A stretch of 64,000 nt of DNA, taken from positions 243,125 to 307,124 of IMG/VR virus record IMGVR_UViG_3300037110_000087; one strand, 5' to 3'. The position numbers were made by a program, and so were the translations under genes. This document shows, one piece after another, positions 2,849 to 64,000 of this stretch. Within the stretch, counting starts at the first letter, position 1. The number at the start of each line of letters is the position of its first letter. Below the pieces are notes generated by a model. It was not told the origin of the DNA. It saw only the letters and a program-made list of their open reading frames with translations, and did not search any database.

Positions 2849-4894
2849 TTATTCACTCTCGTTGATCGCGGCGAACAAGGCTCCCTTAGCGATGGTATTA
2901 AGGGGATCATCAGCCATGACAATCTTGTTGCCGGTCAAGAAGGAAATCTCCCTGGTAGCAGCGATCTTCTGAAATAGTTCCTTGAATCCCTTGGGAATCG
3001 CAGTACCACCAGCGATAGCGATCACAGGGGTATCAATCTCAGGCTTCTCTTCCATCCCATTCCAGGCAGCCGCGATCTGATCAAGCACGTAACCAATGAG
3101 ATGCGTGTAATAGTGGACAACCGCTTCCTGAACGTTGTCCTTGGGGTTCAGGAGATCCGTAGTTTCCTTAGCGCTCATAGCTTTGAGGACGCTCACATTT
3201 ACGGCTCTGGCAACATTTTCATCAATGTAGTCACCGGAGGCCGCGATACTGAAGGATAGCTTTGGCATTTCTTTGCCGAAGACCGCACCACTGACATTCA
3301 TCATACCCGCACCGCAGTTATGGACGCAGACACCAGGAAGAGAAAACGAAGGGTCATTCTCAACTGATAAATCATATACCCATCCGGTGTATTCTTCTTG
3401 CTTTACAGACTTGATCTTATTAAGTCTGTAACCACCAATTCTCTTATGTAGCTCTGAACCAATCGGACTGTCCAGAAGTGACTGAAGCATCCGTTTATTC
3501 GATCCGGTTACAACTACCTCATATACGGTCTTTTTTCCAGAGATCTGTCTTCCCCTGATTAATCCATCATTCCTCGGTTTTCTAGATTTAAATCTAGAAC
3601 TAATTCCCAGGATTCCCAAGGCTTGATGTAAGAAGACCGACAGATCAGAACTAGTGTTGGAAAACGAAATGGTTTCTTGCCCAAAACATCCATCGCTGTT
3701 CAACAGACCATTAACAATCCCAGTAAGAACAGGCAGACTGAGACTTTCGACCTTAAATGGAACCACTTTATTGCCACTATGATAGCAGTGGTTCAAAAGC
3801 CAGCGTGAAAGACCCGCGTAACCCATAGTCAGTCGGATATTATTCCTGTTTCCTCTACTGATCTGAGAAATTTCTCTATCGAAAACAGAACAAGACATCT
3901 TGTAATCTTCCACAAGATCTTGTTCATTTGGACCAAGATCAAGAATTACTGAAGTTTCCCTGGTATCGATATGCCCATCACCAAGGAAATATCCAAGAAA
4001 TTTGCCCAGATTGTAAGACATTTCGAATGTCTTATTGAACTGCTTCCCATTACCAATTCTATCTTTAAAACTGATGAAATTCCTTTTCTGATTGTGATTG
4101 ATTACTGGTTCGCCCACGACATCATCTTTTTTCAGGGAATCCACTCTTTTCCATTTCCAGGACCCACCTTCCAGGACATCTACAAGATGATCTCCAGTCA
4201 GACAAAGTTCTCTACCAGCAATCTTTAGTTTGTAGATTAACTCAGACCGTCCGGTTCTTGTGGTCTTATACACCTGATTCCAAGAACCATTTTTGCTAAG
4301 AACCAAGTCCCCTTCCTCAATGTCCTCAATGTCCTTAACGCCCCCATTGCAGAAGACTTCCTGACCAGGAAGAAGGCAGCTGATGCCAATGCCGGTTAGG
4401 TTCTCATCCAGTAGTTCACTATAGATGACGCAAAGACCCTCACGGAGCGCTACCGGTCTGTAACCAAGCTCAGTAAGCATTTTCTTGAAGACCGCTTCAT
4501 GATAGACCGCATTGAATTCCGCATCCACCGGGTTAGCAGGGACACTGAAATAAAGCAGTTCATTCGGTTCCGCAGGATCACCCAGGACCTGTTTGATGAT
4601 AGCTAGCATGATAGGGGTAGCATTCGGGTCATGAGGATTCAATACGCCCTTAGCCATGGGCCGCTTTGGAGACTGATTAAACGCCTTGGCCAACTGCATG
4701 GCCTCTTCACCCAGGGCGTAAATCTTTCCGTTCATCTGAACGTAAGGAACACCAGCCTTCTTGAGCATACTTAGCACGAGTGGATTTCTATCCAATTCCA
4801 CATACATATTACGAACACGGTTGAAGATGTATTCGTCGTCTTTCATGATTGCCCCGACGACACCGCCGGTACCAATGTCAAGACCCTTTGCCAT
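2849..4894 (-). CDS. actin-fold ATPase (MreB/FtsA/ParM-like) containing an intein
   Basis: N-terminal GLDIGTG (phosphate 1), FSVPA, GIGIS|CGAGMMNV after splicing (phosphate 2), IAGGTAIPKGF (adenosine), DPLNTIAKGAL; 327 aa after intein removal. Confidence 0.85.
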   Translation of the reverse strand: MAKGLDIGTGGVVGAIMKDDEYIFNRVRNMYVELDRNPLVLSMLKKAGVPYVQMNGKIYALGEEAMQLAKAFNQSPKRPMAKGVLNPHDPNATPIMLAIIKQVLGDPAEPNELLYFSVPANPVDAEFNAVYHEAVFKKMLTELGYRPVALREGLCVIYSELLDENLTGIGISCLLPGQEVFCNGGVKDIEDIEEGDLVLSKNGSWNQVYKTTRTGRSELIYKLKIAGRELCLTGDHLVDVLEGGSWKWKRVDSLKKDDVVGEPVINHNQKRNFISFKDRIGNGKQFNKTFEMSYNLGKFLGYFLGDGHIDTRETSVILDLGPNEQDLVEDYKMSCSVFDREISQISRGNRNNIRLTMGYAGLSRWLLNHCYHSGNKVVPFKVESLSLPVLTGIVNGLLNSDGCFGQETISFSNTSSDLSVFLHQALGILGISSRFKSRKPRNDGLIRGRQISGKKTVYEVVVTGSNKRMLQSLLDSPIGSELHKRIGGYRLNKIKSVKQEEYTGWVYDLSVENDPSFSLPGVCVHNCGAGMMNVSGAVFGKEMPKLSFSIAASGDYIDENVARAVNVSVLKAMSAKETTDLLNPKDNVQEAVVHYYTHLIGYVLDQIAAAWNGMEEKPEIDTPVIAIAGGTAIPKGFKELFQKIAATREISFLTGNKIVMADDPLNTIAKGALFAAINESE
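3317..4378 (-). mobile_element. intein (354 aa) with LAGLIDADG homing endonuclease
   Basis: Starts CLLPGQEV (Cys1); block B LTGDH; LGYFLGDG and GLLNSDG LAGLIDADG motifs; VYDLSVENDPSF...VHN end followed by Cys+1. Confidence 0.93.
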
Positions 4895-51595: not shown

Positions 51596-53194
51596 ATGTC
51601 CATCAATAACCGTAGAACTACTCCCCTAGTTCCCTCTGCCATCGCTGTGGCCCAGGCTACCGCCCACAAGAATCATATGGCTGGCAATAGCTGGGAAATT
51701 ACCCCTATCACCCGTCTGAAGTGCATGGCGAGTTCCTGCTTCTTCGGAGAGCCGACCTATTACAACCCCAAAGTGGCTAGCTATGGCCACTTCTACGAGG
51801 GCAGCTTTCTGGGCCAGACCATGTTTGGCAAGGAATGGCATGGTTTAAATCCTGCGCAGAAGTTGGAGAAGGCGATCGATGAGGCCCTCGATTATGATGC
51901 TGAGGCGACTCTCGATTACGCTTTCGAACTGCGTACTCAGTTGAACATCCGTGCCACCCCTCAGGTGATCGCGGTCCGTGCGGCTAATATGGTTTCCCTC
52001 AAGGGTCAGGGAATCCGCCAGTATGCACTGGCTACCATTCAGCGTCCAGATGATGCTGCCACTCAGTTCGCCTACCATGTCGCCAAGTATGGCAAGAACG
52101 CTCCCATTCCCAACGCTCTCAAGAAGGCGTGGCGTGAGTATCTGATCAAGTGCACCGAATATGACTTGGCCAAATACCAGCTGGCCAGCAAGGAAGTCAA
52201 GATGGTCGACCTAATCAATATGGTCCGGCCCAAGAGCGAAGCTATCGACAAGTTCATGAAGGGCACCCTGTCCAACACCGGCAAGACCTGGGAAGCCATC
52301 ATCAGTGGTGGTGGCAGGTGGGATGAAGCGGTTGAAGTGATGGGTCACATGGCTCTGCTGCGCAATTTGCGCAACTTCGTCGAGAAGAGTGATGAAACCA
52401 CTCAGCGTAAGGTTGCTGACAAGCTGGTTGCTACTGCAGCCAAGGGTCATCAGCTGCCTTTCCGCTACTGGTCTGCCTTTAACGCCCTAGTCGAAGGTGG
52501 ACGGAGAGCACCCGGTTTCATGCTGGATGCAGTCGAGAATGCCCTGCGTGTCTCTCTGGGCAATCTACCCCGATTGCAGGGTAACAGCCTAGTGCTGTCG
52601 GACAATTCCGGTAGCGCTCGTCATGCCTTCCAGAGCAAAATGGGTTCAGTCCAGATCTCCACCATCGGTAACCTGCTGGCTGCGATCGTCGGCAAGATCT
52701 CCGATAATGCCAGAATTGGGGTATTCGGTGACCGGCTGTCCTGTGTCGAATCCCGTAAGTCCAGTTCGGTGTTCGATGACCTGAAGACTCTGAATAACCT
52801 AGGCGAAGGAGTCGGCCAGGGAACTGAGAATGGCATCTGGCTGGCGCTCCATCAGGCTATCGCGGAACGCGAACATTGGGATAATATCTTCGTCTGCAGC
52901 GATATGCAAGCCGGTCATGGTGGGCTTTATGGTTGTGGCGTCATCCCCAGCGAATACCTGTGGCGTACCAACAACCAGGGCTATGGTGCGGCCAGCAGCC
53001 CGGTCACCATTGATGTTCCTTACATGCTGCACAAGTACCGGAAGATCAATCCCAATGTCAACGTGTTCCTGATCCAGACCGCTGGATACGAGGACACCAT
53101 CATCCCTGAATACTTCGATCGCACCTACGTGATCGGGGGATGGAGTGATGGGGTGATCCACTTCGCTGATCAGATGATCAAGCTGCGTCAATGA
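51596..53194 (+). CDS. Ro60/Rsr TROVE-vWA RNA-binding protein
   Basis: N.MAGNSW, FFGEPTYY, R..LNIR..P, IQRPDD, MALLRNLRN, QLPFRY..A, VLSDNSGS MIDAS, SDMQ. Confidence 0.9.
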   Translation: MSINNRRTTPLVPSAIAVAQATAHKNHMAGNSWEITPITRLKCMASSCFFGEPTYYNPKVASYGHFYEGSFLGQTMFGKEWHGLNPAQKLEKAIDEALDYDAEATLDYAFELRTQLNIRATPQVIAVRAANMVSLKGQGIRQYALATIQRPDDAATQFAYHVAKYGKNAPIPNALKKAWREYLIKCTEYDLAKYQLASKEVKMVDLINMVRPKSEAIDKFMKGTLSNTGKTWEAIISGGGRWDEAVEVMGHMALLRNLRNFVEKSDETTQRKVADKLVATAAKGHQLPFRYWSAFNALVEGGRRAPGFMLDAVENALRVSLGNLPRLQGNSLVLSDNSGSARHAFQSKMGSVQISTIGNLLAAIVGKISDNARIGVFGDRLSCVESRKSSSVFDDLKTLNNLGEGVGQGTENGIWLALHQAIAEREHWDNIFVCSDMQAGHGGLYGCGVIPSEYLWRTNNQGYGAASSPVTIDVPYMLHKYRKINPNVNVFLIQTAGYEDTIIPEYFDRTYVIGGWSDGVIHFADQMIKLRQ

Positions 53195-55639: not shown

Positions 55640-56419
55640 ATGAAATATGAAGAATTGGGAAACAAAGACCAATACCTAGGGATGGTGACCCTAAGGTGTA
55701 CGACCTGCGAAAAGGAATTCGAACGTCAGGCAAAATACGTTCGATCTTCGATAAAGCTCCATCCGCAAGACAACATAGACTGTGGATGCAAGAATATCAG
55801 GAAGTGTTCCTTCTGTCAAAAATCATCACCTGAGGTAAGATTCACAAAGACTCACAGAGTCTGCGTTGATTGTAGGAAGACTTACAATCATGAATACTAT
55901 CAGGAGAACAAAGAAAAAGTGAATTCGGATAAAGTCTTGAGACAGACAAAGACTTACCGGGAGAACTTTGATCGGGTCAGCCAGTACAAAGAATCTCATT
56001 CCTGTGTTGACTGTGGTAGATTTTTCCCGGCTTGTGCGATGGATTGGGATCATCAAAGAGATAAACTACATAATATTTCTGAGATGGTCAAATTTGCGGC
56101 TTGGGATCTGATTGAAGCTGAGATTGCTAAGTGTGAGCTGATCTGTGCGGTTTGTCACAGGATCAGGACCGCGAAAGAAGGCTCTTACCATAGGGTTAGG
56201 GAGCAAAAACCGAAGGCGCGATCCACCAAGGGCTTCCGTCCTCCTAAAGACGAGTTGGTGAAGCTCGTGCAAACATTCTCAATTTCTGCGATCGGTCGCC
56301 AGTTTGGTGTGAGCGACACGATGGTTAGAAAGTGGTGCAAGATCTTTGACATCGACTACAAATTACTCAGCAAGTTCTCGTTGCAGAACATCTGCCCTGA
56401 GGTTTATGGTCCAGAATAA
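55640..56419 (+). mobile_element. HNH homing endonuclease in ncRNA field
   Basis: CVDCG...MDWDH...EIAKCELICAVCHRIRT. Confidence 0.85.
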
Positions 56420-57492: not shown

Positions 57493-57571
57493 GGCGGGGT
57501 AGCTCAGATGCATTAAGAGTACCGGCTAATTAAGCTGGAAGTCAGGGTCTTGCAAACCCTCCCCGCCACCA
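57493..57571 (+). ncRNA. tRNA-like RNA (loop TAATTAA, T-loop CTTGCAA)
   Basis: GGCGGGG/CCCCGCC-A-CCA; CCGGC/GCTGG; altered T-loop. Confidence 0.7.
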
Positions 57572-57579
57572 GTACAAGT

Positions 57580-57725: not shown

Positions 57726-57796
57726 GGGCGGGTACCTCAGATGCGATAAGAGGTCCTCCAAGGAAGTCGGTGTGTTGCAAGCACTCCCGCCCACCA
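57726..57796 (+). ncRNA. tRNA-like RNA with vestigial anticodon arm
   Basis: GGGCGGG/CCCGCCC-A-CCA; CCTC/GAGG D-arm; CCT-CCA-AGG mini arm; T-loop GTTGCAA. Confidence 0.7.
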
Positions 57797-57839
57797 ATCT
57801 CAAAATCCTGACCCTGTAGTCTTGCTCCTATAACGAGCG

Positions 57840-59006: not shown

Positions 59007-59145
59007 TTCGGCAGTGATTGTCACAGTTACTCCATGCTAAGGACGAGGATTTGGGATTCGAATTCCCATCGGGGCCTCCAATACAACCATTGGTCCCGTA
59101 GCTCAGGGGTAGAGCGCGTAAAACACTGTGTCGCCTTTCTCCGAA
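59007..59145 (+). ncRNA. YrlA-like Y RNA with circularly permuted tRNA domain
   Basis: TTCGG/CCGAA stem with bulged C, CACAG/CTGTG, GTTACTCC; then T-arm TGGGA-TTCGAAT-TCCCA, loop-closed acceptor CGGGGCC/GGTCCCG, D-arm GCTC-AGGGGTA-GAGC. Confidence 0.8.
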
Positions 59146-60057: not shown

Positions 60058-60597
60058 CTATTTACAGAGCTTGTTAGCACAAGCCTGGAATTTTCTTTGG
60101 TCATTGTTCTGAATTCCTTCCAGCTTACTCTCTCCATGAATGGGTTCATAATGGAAGATTCCATTTAATTCGAAGGCTAGCTTCAGTGATGGAATAAAAA
60201 TGTCTAGTTCGGAATTGATGGTATCTTTCCGGTTGAAATGAATCTTAAGATTTGGGTACAATAAAGTAATTTGCTCTTCAAGCCATTTCTCTAGTTTGGA
60301 TCGAGTGGTTCCATGAGTCTTATGAAGGTTATTATATCTAGTCCCGCAAGAAATTGAGCAGAACAATCTACCTGATTTCGATTTCTTGAGATCTTTGGGA
60401 TTTTTGGTGATCAGTTCATTACATTGTGAGCATCTAGTGGCAAATGTAGTTGAATAATGGATATAATAACAATCCACACAACAGAAGACCTTTGATTGAT
60501 TATATCCATGATCTCTCTCAAATGGTCTGTTACATTGACAACAAACTAAGTTTACCATTTTTGTCATTTCAGCTCCTATTACTATGGTATCATGCAA
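60058..60597 (-). mobile_element. PD-(D/E)xK-type homing endonuclease with zinc-finger repeats, C-terminally short
   Basis: CxxC...FCSxxC repeats; ELDIFIP..KLAFELNG.FHY. Confidence 0.7.
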
Positions 60598-60658
60598 TCC
60601 AGGGATTCGATTTTCGGTATTCGAGTCCCTCCATTCCTCGTTATTTTGGGTTCGTATT

Positions 60659-60734
60659 GGATCGGAAGCTATATTGGTTTAGCGCTGGCGTGAAGTCCCA
60701 GAGGATGCAGGTTCGAAGCCTGTCCGATCCACCA
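60659..60734 (+). tRNA. tRNA-Phe(GAA)
   Basis: GGATCGG/CCGATCC-A-CCA; loop GTGAAGT; C31-C39 mismatch. Confidence 0.75.
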
Positions 60735-60769
60735 GTTTTGTTCTCAAAACTATTTAACTTGGAGAGTAT

Positions 60770-61063
60770 ATGAAAGGTGCTATTGTTTCTAATGAACCTG
60801 AATGCACGACAAAGAAGCCATTAATTGCGGCCTTTGAGGATGTTGAATCAACAATTGGGGAAACTGAACGGCTCGTGAGTTTGGTTGAGAGGACCTTTAA
60901 TCTACTGCTTGAAATGGTTCCTGGTGGAGAGGAAGAGGAAGGTCTGGGAAAATCGATCGATCGAAATCCAATCCCAATTGTGCAACGTTTGAATATGCTT
61001 GATGGTCGGTTGAGAACAATCAATAAGGACCTATCAGATATCATCGACCGTAGCCACATCTAA
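60770..61063 (+). CDS. hypothetical coiled-coil protein
   Basis: GGAG RBS. Confidence 0.6.
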   Translation: MKGAIVSNEPECTTKKPLIAAFEDVESTIGETERLVSLVERTFNLLLEMVPGGEEEEGLGKSIDRNPIPIVQRLNMLDGRLRTINKDLSDIIDRSHI

Positions 61064-61150
61064 TCGTTGACCAGAAGGGTGACTGGTTAACCTGTAGGAA
61101 GGGCAGCAAGGCAGCGATCTTGTCCCCTGGTCCGGAGCAATCCGGAGTCG

Positions 61151-61188
61151 AGCCAACCTGGGCACTAGTGATAGCCAACCTGGGCACT
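61151..61188 (+). repeat. 16-bp direct repeat
   Basis: AGCCAACCTGGGCACT at 61151-61166 and 61173-61188. Confidence 0.9.
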
Positions 61189-61300
61189 CGTCATTGAACA
61201 CCAGCGCTAATGGGCAAATGGCCGAAGGACGTTCGCGTCCAACAGGTTGAATTAACAACGAATTGGCGCTCCATTAAAAATCTCATGGAGGGGTAACCCG

Positions 61301-61567
61301 ATGAAGTGTGTACAGAAGATCATCAACAAAGAACCCAAGGAAGTCATCATCAAGCGCGTGTCCAACGAACAGGCCGAAAAACTGGTCAGTGAAGGTTGGG
61401 CCTTCGCCTCCAAGAAGGATTGGAAGGCTGCACCCAATACAACCTGGGTCAAGTCCACTACCACTCCCAATGCCATCAAGGAAGCCAAGCAGCGTAGGAC
61501 GGAGAAGCGTAAAACTCCGACTCCGCCCAGGGAGACTGGTTCGCGCCGGTCCAAGGCAACGAAATAA
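61301..61567 (+). CDS. small basic protein
   Basis: GGAGGG RBS; Lys/Arg-rich tail. Confidence 0.7.
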   Translation: MKCVQKIINKEPKEVIIKRVSNEQAEKLVSEGWAFASKKDWKAAPNTTWVKSTTTPNAIKEAKQRRTEKRKTPTPPRETGSRRSKATK

Positions 61568-61686
61568 AGGTTAGAACAGTTTCAGAACTAGTGGTTGAGA
61601 AGTCACTAGATGTTGAGTCGGGGTAAGCCACAGACATGGCCCGGTAATCTAGCCGGAATACAGTTTCTGCGATCTTCGACAAGTTA

Positions 61687-61774
61687 GTAAGGGCTAATGA
61701 CCCATACAAAGGTAGAGCGGCCTCTATGTTAGGCTTGCCGGGGGTCATGATCCGGTGACTAAAACGACTCTACC
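61687..61774 (+). ncRNA. 88-nt structured repeat, copy A
   Basis: GTAAGGG..ATGACCCAT.CAAAGGTAGAGCGGCC...CGACTCTACC. Confidence 0.6.
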
Positions 61775-61984
61775 TCCAATCGACTCCCTGCGGCGGTTCA
61801 ATTTAACCCGCCCTACTGAGCGATGATATGCATACTCGGCGGCGACCGACTTCCGGATGGCCCAGTGAAGTTTCAGTCCGGAGATTTTGAGAAGTCCACC
61901 CACTTAAGACCGTATCCAAGTCTGTAATTGTTTCTCTTTGGGGATCCGACAGATAAGGCTAGTGGATGAAACGGTTTCCTTTTG

Positions 61985-62072
61985 GTAAGGGTCGATGACC
62001 CATGCAAAGGTAGAGCGGCCACCATGCTTGGCCCTCTGGAGGTTTGCTCCGGAGAAAAACAACGACTCTACC
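61985..62072 (+). ncRNA. 88-nt structured repeat, copy B
   Basis: Same motif with compensatory changes. Confidence 0.6.
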
Positions 62073-62479
62073 ATCCATTTCGTGCCTTTCTACCCCGACC
62101 AAGGATGATTGACACGACTCTATGGGGATGAACAGATTCGACAGGTTTATGCCCTGAGTGTAGCGCAGGTAGAGGAAACCGATGGCCTCTCAAAAATCGG
62201 TAAAAACACAACTGCCGAAGACTTTCTTCTCCAGGCTGCGTAAGCAGCATCCTCTAAGCGATCGTTTGGTAGCTTAGTTGTAAGGAATCTCAAGGATGGT
62301 TCGCCTACCGAGAGAGTTCACAAACTAGATTCCGATGAAATGTTCTAGTCGGAATGACACAAAGGACATAAGTCCTCGATTAGAGTTGTCCGGTTTACTC
62401 TACAGAGGTCACTAGAAACGGACTAAACCTGTGAATGAACTACCTTAGGAATTTTCTTGGACAGGACTAGCATAAGTCC

Positions 62480-63043
62480 TCATCTCCACCTTGTTTGGCT
62501 AGTGCGTCCGTCCCAATCACCAAACAGACCGAGCGCATTAGCCTTCCTCATGCCTTCACAGACCACGAGCCAAGCGTTATAAGGCATAATTCCCCTGGTC
62601 ACATTACATCGGTAACAAGCAGGGACCACGTTGCCCTTCGTGTGACCTTTAGAATTGTCAATTCTATCTAATGTCATATTGGTGATAAGGTTGTCACCAC
62701 AGTAAAAGCAAGGATTAGAAATTTGTGCCAAAATAAATTTGACATCCAGATCCGAGACCCTTTTCTTCTTCTTGTCCGCTGATTTACAATATTTGAGAAT
62801 TAAGGCAGCGCGGACTTCTAAATTGGTTGACCTAGTTTCAATCTTCCTCTGAATTGATCTTCTTTGCGCTGCTTCTGGTGTAGTTTTCATTTTCTTGTAG
62901 GATAATCTTCTCAGATTGTCGCAGGTCTTACAAAGAGAGCGAAAGTATCTGACTCCTTTGATGGTTTGGGCGTAAGGCTTAACTTCGGGATATTTCTTAT
63001 TGCAACCAGAACACTGCCAAGATTCTAAGGTGATTCTTTCCAT
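62480..63043 (-). mobile_element. HNH homing endonuclease
   Basis: CFYCGD...TLDRIDNSKGH...NVVPACYRCN. Confidence 0.85.
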
Positions 63044-63622
63044 TGGTGGACCTCTCCATTAAGTATAACATTTCACTAGTCCACCAACGGTTATAATATC
63101 TTTAGGAGTAGTGATGAACAAAATTAGAGTACAAAATCTTTTGACCAGAATTTCTAGGCTCGTTCAGCAGGAACGATTGGACAAACCATCCTTGAGGCAC
63201 CGTTCCATGCCTAACCCGCAGACCCCTCAAGAGTATGCAAGACGGGAGATTGGCTTAGAGGTAGCCATTCTTTAAAGAGTGACAAGGACGATCCATAAGG
63301 GGGTAATCGGTGCGGGGCGACACCCTTGATCCGTTAGCCGAACTCAGTATAAGTCCAGGGGAAGAATAGCGGACAGTCTTCAACAAGTAGTGGGTATTAC
63401 ACCGGTATCCAGTTAAGTCGAACGGGAAGTGTTCAGAACCAATCGGCAGTTGAAGGACCCTTAGAGTCTTTGGTGTAATAACACACCTTCTTGCAGACCG
63501 CTGGTATGGAGCGGAATAAAAGAGTCCATAACAAAGCAGATTCCGTAGTCGTCATCTGAAAAGACCCTCGACTGGAGCGATCAAAGTCTGCCATGTTGGT
63601 TGATCATCTAGACCAATTTCTT

Positions 63623-63735
63623 TGGCTCATACCTCAGCTGGTAGAGGGCTCGCCTGAATCGTTATCGTAGTTTCGGACTGCGAATAACCTGTAGTAAGCG
63701 AGATGTCGGTGGTTCGACTCCACCTGGGCCAACCA
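63623..63735 (+). tRNA. tRNA (Ile-like body) with 44-nt anticodon loop containing an intron-like hairpin
   Basis: TGGCTCA/TGGGCCA-A-CCA; CTCGC/GCGAG; GGTGG-TTCGACT-CCACC; insert GTTAT-CGTAG..CTGCG-A-ATAAC. Confidence 0.75.
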
Positions 63736-63857: not shown

Positions 63858-64000
63858 ATCGCTAGTGACCGACTGGTAAGGTCGTCCCTGATGGGGACGT
63901 AAATGCGCGGGTTCGAGTCCCGCTCTTGAAGGTAACTTCGGGATAGCTCAGGTGGTAGAGCCGTCGTGGACGTTAAAATGTGGGTTCAAATCCTGCCTAG
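63858..64000 (+). ncRNA. double tRNA-like element, truncated by window end
   Basis: D1-AC1-T1, acceptor hairpin TCTTGAA-GGTAAC-TTCGGGA, then D2-AC2-T2. Confidence 0.6.

What the first reader, a model, noticed from the sequence alone, without database searches (positions are those of the whole stretch)
61687..62072. Two 88-nt copies of an unknown pseudoknotted RNA motif
Seen: both copies are 88 nt, 298 nt apart, with GGG/CCC, GGTAGAG/CTCTACC, GCC/GGC and CCGG-type helices. A putative pseudoknot covaries (CATA with TATG in copy A; CATG with CATG in copy B). A weaker relative may start near 62168. Inference: a conserved functional RNA, such as a self-cleaving ribozyme that processes the ncRNA polycistron, or a protein-binding element.
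Basis: partly seen in the sequence, partly recalled or inferred. Interest (0 to 1): 0.62.

Follow-up and report, generated by a model that had tools for sequence, protein, structure and literature searches.

The report
Duplicated orphan structured RNA in phage tRNA array
A 307-kb peat phage carries two diverged copies of a roughly 95-nt RNA fold (hairpin plus three-way junction) just upstream of its tmRNA gene; selection has kept the fold, but it belongs to no known RNA family and nothing here shows that it cuts itself.

Summary
Two units (61684-61780 and 61982-62078, + strand, 298 nt apart) share one fold: a 5' hairpin P1, an invariant 7-bp closing helix P2 (GGUAGAG/CUCUACC), a 5-bp/7-nt-loop hairpin P3, a variable hairpin P4, an A-rich junction and a UCCA tail. 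All seven substitutions in P3 and P4 keep pairing, two pairs changing on both sides. Random substitution keeps all 18 pairs of P2-P4 paired in 2e-4 of trials. G-U pairs point to the + strand, and copy A has stops in all six frames.

The proposed pseudoknot rests on one covarying pair. Its 4-bp complementarity alone is what chance gives. The "weaker relative near 62168" is tmRNA pseudoknot 1 and is not above shuffles.

No homolog was found in Rfam 15, viral, metagenome or genome collections, or about 30 Ro60-encoding phage records. The unit fails tests for tRNA, YrlA, HDV-like and hammerhead. The nearest architecture is the RNase-P-processed C4 antisense RNA of phage P1 (17 bits, cut-off 45), so it is not a member.

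Best guess: a phage-specific small RNA released from the tRNA/tmRNA precursor, with a conserved scaffold and variable pairing elements. Metatranscriptome contigs lie on the region but show no ends.

The parts
61684..61780 (+). Copy A, whole conserved unit (5' hairpin, three-way junction, UCCA tail)
61691..61703 (+). A: P1 hairpin GGGCUAAUGACCC. It has 3 G-C pairs; the upper part is weak (a C.A mismatch and a U.G pair).
61697..61706 (+). A: leader segment AUGACCCAUA.
61711..61717 (+). A: P2 5' strand GGUAGAG. It is the closing helix of the junction and starts with GGU after an A-rich leader.
61719..61735 (+). A: P3, a 5-bp stem with the 7-nt loop CUAUGUU
61737..61756 (+). A: P4, a variable hairpin GCCGGG/UCCGGU with an 8-nt loop
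61757..61767 (+). A: single-stranded junction J4/2 GACUAAAACGA. The 3' AACGA is invariant between copies.
61768..61778 (+). A: P2 3' strand CUCUACC followed by U-CCA
61982..62078 (+). Copy B, whole conserved unit
61989..62001 (+). B: P1 hairpin GGGUCGAUGACCC (5 bp, 3-nt loop)
62009..62015 (+). B: P2 5' strand GGUAGAG
62017..62033 (+). B: P3, a 5-bp stem with the 7-nt loop CCAUGCU. Pair 40-48 is A-U here and U-A in copy A; pair 36-52 is G-C here and G-U in copy A.
62035..62053 (+). B: P4, a 7-bp hairpin UCUGGAG/CUCCGGA with the loop GUUUG. The loop plus C66 is complementary to the leader GCAAA (5 bp, p 0.07).
62054..62065 (+). B: junction J4/2 GAAAAACAACGA
62066..62077 (+). B: P2 3' strand CUCUACC followed by A-UCCA
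62106..62122 (+). Partial echo of J4/2 plus the P2 3' strand (TGATTGACACGACTCTA), one base before the tmRNA 5' end. ACGACTCTA occurs only at these three places in the genome.
62124..62491 (+). tmRNA gene (context). Copy B ends about 50 nt upstream of it.

Best explanation
The two units are paralogous genes, or modules, for a small structured RNA specific to this phage lineage. They are transcribed on the + strand within the tRNA/tmRNA array.

Shown: the fold consists of P1, a three-way junction P2/P3/P4 and an A-rich junction, and selection keeps it. P2, P3, the leader linker and the 3' end of the junction (AACGA) are conserved in sequence. The P4 loop and the 5' part of J4/2 are free to differ.

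Inferred: like its tRNA and tmRNA neighbours, the RNA is released from a long precursor. RNase P would cut 5' of the GG that opens the 7-bp closing helix, a helix followed by an NCCA-like tail. This would give an RNA of about 68 nt whose conserved helices are a scaffold. The variable single-stranded elements (P4 loop, J4/2, perhaps the P3 loop) would pair with short RNA targets, as in the C4 antisense RNA of phage P1. The only complementary sites seen so far are in the units' own leaders. The two copies would then have different specificities.

I hold the first layer (a functional structured RNA) at about 0.8. The confidence given for this explanation is for the whole chain.
For: Structure under selection:
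- 0 of 18 pairs in P2-P4 are broken, although 32 of 99 columns differ.
- Pairs 40-48 (U-A to A-U) and 54-73/72 (G-U to U-A) changed on both sides. There are three further one-sided wobble changes.
- A simulation of random substitution gives 2e-4.
- Five G-U pairs would be C.A mismatches on the other strand.
- Copy A has stops in all six frames, and the differences fall 10/12/10 over the three codon positions.

Boundaries and context:
- Similarity begins at the P1 hairpin and ends at UCCA, and the flanks are unrelated.
- The units lie in an array of tRNAs that all end in ACCA and mostly have a spacer hairpin upstream.
- The region has no sigma-70-like promoter or intrinsic terminator, so it needs processing.

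Expression:
- Peat metatranscriptome contigs lie at 61617-61767 and 61760-61910 with 0 mismatches.
- In the same runs there are none on the coding flanks 60600-61500 and 62600-63200, which a DNA run does cover.

C4-like architecture:
- The only Rfam match to either copy is C4, for copy A (17 bits).
- The alignment shows the same order of parts: an A-rich leader, a closing helix opening with GG, hairpin 1, hairpin 2 with identical stem letters GCCGG/CCGGU, a single-stranded junction, the 3' strand and a CC-rich tail.
- P1 c4 is cut by RNase P at GGW and uses its hairpin-2 loop and junction for pairing (PMC5320573; P1 record annotation and sequence).
- The P1 record also annotates putative C4 target sites (a1, b1) upstream of c4. 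This parallels the loop-to-leader complementarity here (A: 7 bp, p 0.008; B: 5 bp, p 0.07).
Against: - No homolog exists outside this genome, so everything rests on two paralogs.
- The C4 match is statistically at noise level: E 0.34 over all families and 0.22 per genome. Scores of 13-18 bits occur in 3 of 29 other phage records.
- Copy B does not match C4 at all.
- The model built from the motif does not find P1 c4.
- The closing helix is 7 bp, against about 16-17 bp in C4.
- No trans target with long complementarity exists in the phage genome; counts are at chance.
- The loop-to-leader sites sit in different registers in A and B.
- The two RNA-library contigs bridge the proposed RNase P site and the proposed 3' end. 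They are single 151-nt contigs that could be precursor or contaminating DNA.
- Partial gene conversion could also explain the invariant tracts.
Confidence: 0.3

Rival explanations
1. Protein-binding tRNA-shaped decoy or scaffold, possibly the Y-RNA-type partner of the phage's own Ro60 (TROVE) protein or a ligand of its CCA-adding-family enzyme. The invariant P2 and junction would be the protein-recognition surface, and P4 a spacer arm.
For: - The phage encodes Ro60 8.5 kb upstream on the same strand and a CCA-adding-family enzyme.
- No canonical YrlA lies near Ro60, in this phage or in 29 related Ro60 phages, so the partner RNA is unknown.
- Bacterial Y RNAs mimic tRNA and often come in pairs (PMC4201824).
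- Junction geometry (7-bp helix, 1 nt, arm, 1 nt, arm, 12 nt, helix, N-CCA) resembles a T-armless tRNA.
- Sequence-specific conservation of a helix is typical of protein sites.
- The P1 loops come within one mismatch of the GNCGAAN0-1G Ro-binding motif: GGCUAAUG in A and GUCGAUG in B.
Against: - The motif is absent from 10-kb flanks of 79 Ro60 loci and from about 28 whole Ro60-phage records.
- The Rfam YrlA model does not match it.
- It has no T-arm or D-arm and no terminal 5'/3' stem.
- A one-mismatch match to a six-position motif is expected by chance in 90 nt.
- ARAGORN does not call it, even in armless-tRNA mode or at 70% stringency.
- Copy B's CCA is out of register.
Confidence: 0.17
2. 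Cis-acting precursor element. The folds act only within the long primary transcript, as folding insulators or processing punctuation that separate the upstream mRNA from the tmRNA and guide its 5' maturation. They are then degraded.
For: - They sit between an ORF (61301-61567) and the tmRNA.
- A third, partial echo of the 3' part directly abuts the tmRNA 5' end.
- GGUAGAG of copy B can also pair with CUCUAU of that echo (6 bp, by inspection), giving an alternative structure.
- Spacer hairpins precede most tRNAs of the array.
- The contigs in RNA libraries are contiguous with the flanks.
Against: - Related phages with a tmRNA have a plain promoter and hairpin upstream, and no such element.
- Sequence-level invariance of 26- and 12-nt tracts is more than a mere insulator needs.
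- Two full copies 300 nt apart are not needed to process one tmRNA.
Confidence: 0.15
3. Self-cleaving ribozyme of a new class that processes the ncRNA polycistron.
For: - The fold is compact, with conserved junction nucleotides (CAAA, C35, AACGA) and a possible tertiary pairing.
- Phage tRNA arrays are known homes of small ribozymes, for example theta ribozymes (PMC10879173).
- The precursor needs cutting.
Against: - No match to any Rfam ribozyme family at E<=10.
- HDV-like or theta topology is impossible: there is no P1 3' strand between P3 and P4 (1 nt only), and the unit is not within 5 nt of a tRNA.
- Junction lengths of 1, 1 and 12 do not fit the hammerhead core.
- RNA-library contigs run uncut through 61617-61767 and 61760-61910.
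- No homologs exist to show conserved catalytic nucleotides.
Confidence: 0.07
4. Functionless remnant: a local duplication in a recombination-prone array. The array holds three HNH endonuclease genes and several tRNA fragments. The duplicate is decaying, and gene conversion keeps some tracts identical.
For: - The array is full of partial tRNA copies and odd tRNA-like genes and homing endonucleases.
- No homolog occurs anywhere else.
- A third copy is already reduced to 17 nt.
Against: - Neutral decay would break stems. Here 7 stem substitutions all keep pairing, two pairs by double changes (2e-4).
- The flanks have diverged to randomness while the unit has not.
- The unit boundaries coincide with the fold.
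Confidence: 0.1

Closest known systems
C4 antisense RNA of phages P1/P7 (Rfam RF01695)
   Same: - It is a phage-encoded RNA of about 70-80 nt, cut out of a longer transcript.
- Both have a closing helix that opens with GGW after an A/U-rich leader and is followed by a CC-rich, CCA-like tail.
- Both have two internal hairpins forming a three-way junction, with a single-stranded junction before the 3' strand.
- The hairpin-2 stem letters GCCGG/CCGGU are identical in copy A.
- Variation is concentrated in the hairpin-2 loop and the junction, which are the specificity elements b' and a' of C4.
- Complementary sites lie upstream in the same transcript (a1/b1 in P1).
Sources; PMC5320573.
   Different: - Copy A scores 17 bits against a cut-off of 45, and copy B does not match.
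- The closing helix is 7 bp rather than about 16-17 bp.
- The hairpin-1 loop is 7 nt rather than a tetraloop.
- There is an extra conserved 5' hairpin.
- There is no downstream gene whose ribosome-binding site is complementary.
- The setting is a tRNA/tmRNA array of a 307-kb phage, not an immunity operon with icd/ant.
tRNA, in particular T-armless tRNAs, and RNase P substrates with an acceptor-like helix
   Same: - A 7-bp terminal helix followed by N-CCA (copy A).
- Junction spacing of 1 nt, an arm of 5 bp with a 7-nt loop, 1 nt, a second arm, then a 12-nt strand in place of a T-arm.
- It sits in a tRNA array whose members all end in ACCA and have spacer hairpins upstream.
   Different: - It has no T-arm, no D-loop and no anticodon-loop signature.
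- The second arm's loop is 5 or 8 nt.
- It is not called by the Rfam tRNA model at E<=10 or by ARAGORN in any mode tried.
- Copy B's CCA is shifted by one base.
Bacterial and phage Y RNAs (YrlA, RF02553) bound by Ro60
   Same: - They are small structured RNAs, often two per genome, encoded near a Ro60 gene and partly tRNA-like (PMC4201824).
- This phage has Ro60 and lacks a recognisable YrlA.
   Different: - It has no T-arm or D-arm modules, no terminal stem and no CM match.
- It lies 8.5 kb from Ro60.
- It is absent from all other Ro60 phages examined.
Theta / HDV-like and other small self-cleaving ribozymes of phage tRNA arrays
   Same: The genomic setting (phage tRNA cluster) and the size.
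   Different: The topology and the conserved cores do not fit, and there is no CM match (PMC10879173 for theta: cleavage site within 5 nt of a tRNA, catalytic C at the start of J4/2 in a nested double pseudoknot).

Membership tests
C4 antisense RNA (RF01695) | Covariance-model score at or above the gathering score (45 bits) | tested here: not met
   Copy A scores 17.0 bits (E 0.34 over all families, 0.22 per genome). Copy B has no match at E<=10. P1 c4 scores 68.8 bits as a positive control.
C4 antisense RNA (RF01695) | Architecture: closing helix opening with GGW, two internal hairpins, single-stranded junction, CC-rich 3' tail | tested here: met
   CM alignment, helices, and comparison with the P1 c4 sequence. 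The closing helix is only 7 bp, against about 16-17 bp.
C4 antisense RNA (RF01695) | Loop and junction complementary to two short sites over the ribosome-binding site of a downstream gene on the same transcript | tested here: not met
   No ORF follows either copy. Genome-wide complements of the loops occur at chance level. The only complementary sites are in the units' own leaders.
C4 antisense RNA (RF01695) | 5' end made by RNase P | not testable with these tools
   Only assembled contigs were available, and they show no ends.
tRNA | Cloverleaf with D-, anticodon and T-arms that tRNA finders recognise | tested here: not met
   No hit from the Rfam tRNA model at E<=10. ARAGORN does not call it in default, -mt, -mtmam, ps80 or ps70 modes, although it makes 23 to 267 other calls in the window.
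tRNA | 7-bp acceptor helix followed by a discriminator base and CCA | tested here: inconclusive
   A: CUCUACC-U-CCA. B: CUCUACC-A-UCCA, one base out of register. All eight true or tRNA-shaped genes of the array end in A-CCA.
YrlA / Y RNA (RF02553) | CM match, with T-arm and D-arm modules and a terminal stem | tested here: not met
   No match over the units. The only sub-threshold YrlA hits in the genome are at 63906-63961 and 59043-59121.
YrlA / Y RNA (RF02553) | GNCGAAN0-1G motif near the 5' end (PMC4201824) | tested here: inconclusive
   The P1 loops read GGCUAAUG (A) and GUCGAUG (B), each one mismatch away. That is about what chance gives in 90 nt.
YrlA / Y RNA (RF02553) | Bound by Ro60 | not testable with these tools
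   Ro60 is present at 51596-53194. The motif does not co-occur with Ro60 in the other phages examined.
HDV-like / theta ribozymes | Nested double pseudoknot: the P1 3' strand lies between P3 and P4, the catalytic C opens J4/2, and the cleavage site is within 5 nt of a tRNA | tested here: not met
   Only 1 nt separates P3 and P4. In copy B no complement to the would-be P1 exists (inspection). There is no Rfam hit. The nearest tRNA is about 950 nt away.
Hammerhead, twister, twister-sister, pistol, hatchet, hairpin ribozymes | CM match or conserved catalytic core | tested here: not met
   No Rfam 15 match at E<=10, even in 111-nt searches. Junction lengths of 1, 1 and 12 do not fit the hammerhead core.
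Any self-cleaving ribozyme | Site-specific self-cleavage | not testable with these tools
   Contigs from RNA libraries span the unit edges uncut, but each is a single contig.

The most novel reading that the evidence does not exclude
The units found a new class of modular small RNAs in giant-phage tRNA arrays. They would have a tRNA-acceptor-like, RNase-P-released scaffold with exchangeable pairing loops, making a miniature, independently evolved or extremely diverged C4-type regulator. Alternatively, they are the missing Y-RNA partner of phage Ro60 proteins. Either reading would add a new regulatory layer to the translation-related RNA kit carried by this phage: tRNAs, tmRNA and a fragment resembling the 23S rRNA GTPase-associated centre.
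Probability: 0.2. Interest if true: 0.65.

Novelty: new variant of a known kind. Interest (0 to 1): 0.42.

Why it matters
Giant phages carry tRNA arrays, tmRNAs and RNA-quality-control proteins such as Ro60, but the small non-tRNA RNAs embedded in these arrays are almost unexplored. This element is a clean case of an orphan RNA whose fold is demonstrably under selection, with a conserved scaffold and variable loops.

If it is released by RNase P and acts by base pairing like C4, or binds Ro60, tRNA arrays would also be nurseries for regulatory RNAs built on an acceptor-stem chassis.

Its present weakness is that it is known from one phage lineage only. General conclusions must therefore wait for relatives or an experiment.

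Tried and rejected
Homolog searches that found nothing real:
- Exact or degenerate pattern scans. Viral contigs: four patterns. Metagenome contigs: one hit, which lacks the closing helix and scores 7.9 bits. Genome contigs: nine hits, all below 14 bits.
- blastn against GenBank phages.
- The covariance model R1, built from the two copies. It was run with filters off on L003/L004, on 77 further Ro60 loci totalling 1.4 Mb (the hits are type-II tRNAs), and on 28 whole phage records. The single 22-bit hit lies inside a coding region.

Synteny route:
- The flanking 88-aa ORF has no relative at all.
- Ro60's best relative among 5.8 billion proteins is 52% identical. No close relative of this phage is public.

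Ideas rejected:
- 'Third copy near 62168'.
- A third copy between A and B at 61858-61884: marginal, p 0.07.
- T7-like promoter reading of ACGACTCTAT|GGGG. The word occurs only at these three places. No T7-type RNA polymerase was found, although that search had no positive control.
- Protein-coding repeat.
- DNA-level palindrome, because G-U pairs and the asymmetric structure argue against it.
- Derivation from tmRNA pseudoknot 1 or from a tRNA 5' half, which shares only GGUAGAG(C).
- A general tmRNA upstream element. Other phage tmRNAs have plain promoters.
- Trans targets in the phage genome.

Not obtainable:
- RtcB was not found in the genome.
- The original C4 papers (PMC41593, PMC312442) are not held.

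Full report
**Setting**

The window is the last 64 kb of a 307-kb IMG/VR phage record that is about 98% complete. Public sequencing runs that hold this stretch are peat and permafrost metagenomes.

From about 54.8 kb to the contig end, the + strand carries an RNA gene array:
- five tRNAs accepted by the Rfam model (four at the gathering threshold on the whole window, tRNA-Arg and tRNA-Cys in the closer scan, the tRNA at 63623-63732) and five default ARAGORN tRNAs, with overlap between the two sets;
- a tmRNA at 62124-62491 (Rfam 86 bits);
- several tRNA-shaped oddities.

The array is interspersed with small ORFs and three HNH homing-endonuclease genes. A Ro60/TROVE protein is encoded just upstream at 51596-53194. 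A CCA-adding-family nucleotidyltransferase is encoded elsewhere in the genome.

**The observation**

The two copies are real. The repeat finder, BLAST and a covariance model all recover exactly two units in the whole genome. They lie at 61684-61780 (A) and 61982-62078 (B), 298 nt apart on the + strand.

67 of 99 ungapped columns are identical. Outside the units, the flanks are no more similar than dinucleotide shuffles.

Both copies fold alone into the same structure, with MFE z-scores of -2.6 and -5.2. They keep that fold when the entire 556-nt intergenic region is folded.

**Anatomy** (columns of alignment A2; coordinates)

- P1 is a 5' hairpin, GGGUC-GAU-GACCC in B. A has only three G-C pairs plus a weak top.
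- A 7-nt linker, AUR-CAAA, follows.
- P2 is GGUAGAG/CUCUACC, 7 bp, invariant, and closes a three-way junction.
- One C separates P2 from P3.
- P3 has 5 bp and a 7-nt loop, CYAUGYU.
- One nucleotide separates P3 from P4.
- P4 is a hairpin of 6-7 bp, with a loop of 8 nt in A and 5 nt in B.
- J4/2 is 11-12 nt, A-rich, and its last five letters AACGA are invariant.
- The P2 3' strand follows, then U-CCA in A and A-UCCA in B.

**Is the structure more than chance?**

Yes. The 32 differing columns are very unevenly spread. Columns 14-39 carry one change and columns 80-91 carry none. The P1 loop, the P3 loop, P4 and the 5' part of J4/2 differ freely.

- Within P3, pair 40-48 is U-A in A and A-U in B, and pair 36-52 is G-U versus G-C.
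- Within P4, after allowing a one-base register shift, pair 54-73/72 is G-U versus U-A. Two further pairs differ by one-sided wobble changes.
- No pair of P2, P3 or P4 is broken in either copy.

In 200,000 simulations of 28 random substitutions, all 18 pairs stayed paired in 2.4e-4 of trials. That fell to about 1e-4 when at least seven substitutions hit stems, as observed.

Five G-U pairs would be C.A mismatches on the opposite strand, so the + strand is the functional one. That matches the orientation of the array.

The element is not coding. Copy A has stops in all six frames, the differences fall 10/12/10 over codon positions, and P4 carries an indel.

**The pseudoknot**

The pairing of columns 20-23 with 42-45 exists in both copies, and its last pair covaries (A-U in A, G-C in B). 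Three points weaken it:
- A 4-bp match between a 7-nt loop and the 27-nt leader is found in 40-53% of loop shuffles.
- The change at column 23 is also compatible with the nested extension of P1 (U5-A23 becomes U5.G23), which is part of the MFE fold.
- It is a single event.

A stronger loop-to-leader complementarity was found. In A, the P4 loop GGGUCAU pairs with AUGACCC, the P1 3' strand (7 bp, p 0.008). In B, the P4 loop UUUGC pairs with GCAAA of the linker (5 bp, p 0.07), which is a different register.

So some interaction between the loops and the leader is plausible, either as a tertiary contact or as a pairing site. Its exact form is unresolved.

**The 'weaker relative near 62168'**

This lies inside the tmRNA, in pseudoknot 1, and shares only GGUAGAG and GGCCUCU with copy A. 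The local alignment score is at shuffle level (p 0.15 and 0.55).

There is, however, a short significant echo of the unit's 3' part. TGATTGACACGACTCTA at 62106-62122 ends one base before the tmRNA 5' end (p about 0.01). The 9-mer ACGACTCTA occurs only at these three sites in 307 kb.

I read this as the remnant of a third unit. Whether it also matters for tmRNA maturation is open.

**Expression**

All four runs laid were assembled contigs, so they show no ends or strands. In three peat metatranscriptomes, contigs identical to the phage lie on:
- 61617-61767, crossing the 5' edge of unit A;
- 61760-61910, crossing its 3' edge;
- the tmRNA (62140-62574, 62186-62431 and 62226-62388);
- 63368-63609.

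None lie on the coding stretches 60600-61500 or 62600-63200, which a DNA run of the same habitat does cover.

This pattern favours transcription of the RNA array over DNA carry-over, but it is thin: the contigs on the motif are single 151-nt pieces. They run uncut through the proposed processing sites. That is mild evidence against efficient cleavage, or they simply represent precursor.

**Homology**

No homolog was found outside this genome.
- Rfam 15 gives no match over the units at E<=10 in a 3-kb search.
- In 111-nt searches with the laxest filters, copy B gives nothing. Copy A gives one sub-threshold match, to the C4 antisense RNA (17 bits, cut-off 45, E 0.34).
- Pattern scans of viral, metagenome and genome collections returned only chance hits that fail the covariance model.
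- The model found nothing real in 79 Ro60-encoding viral loci or about 28 whole related phage records.
- The upstream ORF is an orphan.
- Even Ro60 has no relative above 52% identity among 5.8 billion proteins.

This phage therefore has no sequenced close kin, and synteny cannot help.

**What it is not**

- tRNA: neither the Rfam model nor ARAGORN calls it, in default, metazoan-mitochondrial (armless) or 70%-stringency modes.
- YrlA: there is no match and no T-arm or D-arm.
- HDV-like or theta: that fold needs the P1 3' strand between P3 and P4, where there is only one nucleotide. Copy B has no complement for it. Theta ribozymes also sit within 5 nt of a tRNA (PMC10879173).
- Hammerhead: junction lengths of 1, 1 and 12 do not fit its core.

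**What it resembles**

Its shape is that of a tRNA without a T-arm: a 7-bp terminal helix, two arms, a 12-nt replacement strand and N-CCA. It sits in an array whose genuine members all end in ACCA and are mostly preceded by a spacer hairpin.

The best-matching described RNA is C4 of phages P1 and P7. C4 is a 77-nt antisense RNA cut from a longer transcript by RNase P at a GGW that opens a long closing helix. That helix encloses two hairpins, and C4 pairs with its targets through the hairpin-2 loop and the single-stranded junction (PMC5320573; the P1 record and sequence).

The cmscan alignment places copy A on that plan part for part, including identical GCCGG/CCGGU stem letters. The parts that differ between A and B (the P4 loop and the 5' part of J4/2) are the ones that set specificity in C4. 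P1 also carries annotated putative C4 sites upstream of c4 (a1/b1), much like the loop-to-leader complementarity here.

Against membership:
- The score is at noise level; 13-18 bits turn up in 3 of 29 other phage records.
- Copy B does not match.
- The reciprocal search fails.
- The closing helix is 7 bp, not about 17.
- There is no downstream gene with complementary sites, and no trans target in the phage.

So it is not a C4 family member, but it may work like one.

**Verdict**

The finding is a genuine, selected, strand-specific RNA fold present twice, with a third remnant, upstream of a phage tmRNA. It is an orphan.

My best explanation (0.3 for the full chain) is a small RNA released from the array precursor by the tRNA-end machinery. 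It would have a conserved scaffold and variable pairing elements.

| Rival | Confidence |
|---|---|
| Protein-binding tRNA mimic, including a Ro60 partner | 0.17 |
| Purely cis-acting processing element | 0.15 |
| Decaying duplication | 0.10 |
| New self-cleaving ribozyme | 0.07 |

End mapping plus RNase P and self-cleavage assays on two short transcripts would separate these.

Noticed in passing
window 63244-63324 (+): A stretch resembling the GTPase-associated centre (H43/H44 region) of bacterial 23S rRNA. It gives a weak match to LSU model positions 1095-1146 (12.9 bits, E 0.027 in a 141-nt search), with a 40-nt insert where the model has 11 nt. Very deep contigs from other organisms, in both RNA and DNA runs, share only 63245-63281. 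It may be an rRNA-domain mimic in the phage's RNA array.
   Followed up: partly
window 57494-57572 and 57726-57797 (+); also 63937-64000: tRNA-shaped genes that Rfam and default ARAGORN miss. They have 7-bp acceptor stems ending in A-CCA, normal D-arms and unusual T-loops (CUUGCAA, GUUGCAA). TL2 and the element cut off by the contig end have only a 3-bp mini 'anticodon' arm.
   Followed up: partly
window 63623-63732 (+); echoes at 61088-61194: A tRNA (Rfam 50.8 bits) with an insertion of about 40 nt in the anticodon loop. The anticodon would read GAA (Phe). That is far too short for a group I intron. Partial copies of its 3' half, including a tandem 22-nt repeat AGCCAACCTGGGCAC..., lie at 61088-61194.
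   Followed up: no
window 63906-63961 (+): T-arm, then a closed stem-loop, then a D-arm: the module order of YrlA Y RNAs. It scores 28 bits against a cut-off of 69. It overlaps a doubtful 'tRNA-Ile(gat)' with a poor acceptor stem. It could be a tRNA dimer or a divergent Y RNA for the phage Ro60. The contig ends 39 nt later.
   Followed up: partly
window 51596-53194 (+); loci L003-L084: A Ro60/TROVE protein is encoded next to the RNA array. 79 viral contigs encode relatives (30-50% identity). In the loci scanned with Rfam, Ro60 sits within tRNA arrays, some of which hold a tmRNA. None of the 30 records searched has a YrlA above the Rfam cut-off, so the RNA partner of these phage Ro60s is unknown.
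   Followed up: partly
window 62124-62491 (+): A full-length one-piece tmRNA with G3.U70 and a 3' ACC that lacks the final A, unlike all tRNAs of the array. Rfam finds it but ARAGORN misses it. It is the best-covered part of the region in metatranscriptome contigs, one of which runs 83 nt past the predicted 3' end. A related, much deeper tmRNA in the same runs may be the host's.
   Followed up: partly
window 55640-56419 (+), 60058-60597 (-), 62480-63043 (-): Three HNH or homing-endonuclease genes lie inside the RNA array. They are a likely driver of the local duplications and tRNA fragments.
   Followed up: no
G000:C1:207122-208756 (-), outside the window: A 544-aa ORF (open frame 545 aa) with a CCA-adding-enzyme / poly(A)-polymerase family domain (PF01743, 58.5 bits). 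No RtcB was found in the genome.
   Followed up: no
window 2849-4894 (-): An actin-like 'Volactin' family protein interrupted by an intein with a LAGLIDADG endonuclease domain.
   Followed up: no
L004 8088-8170 (+): A related Ro60 phage carries an 83-nt mini 'tmRNA' that consists of the tRNA-like domain only. It has its own sigma-70-like promoter and a CCA end.
   Followed up: no
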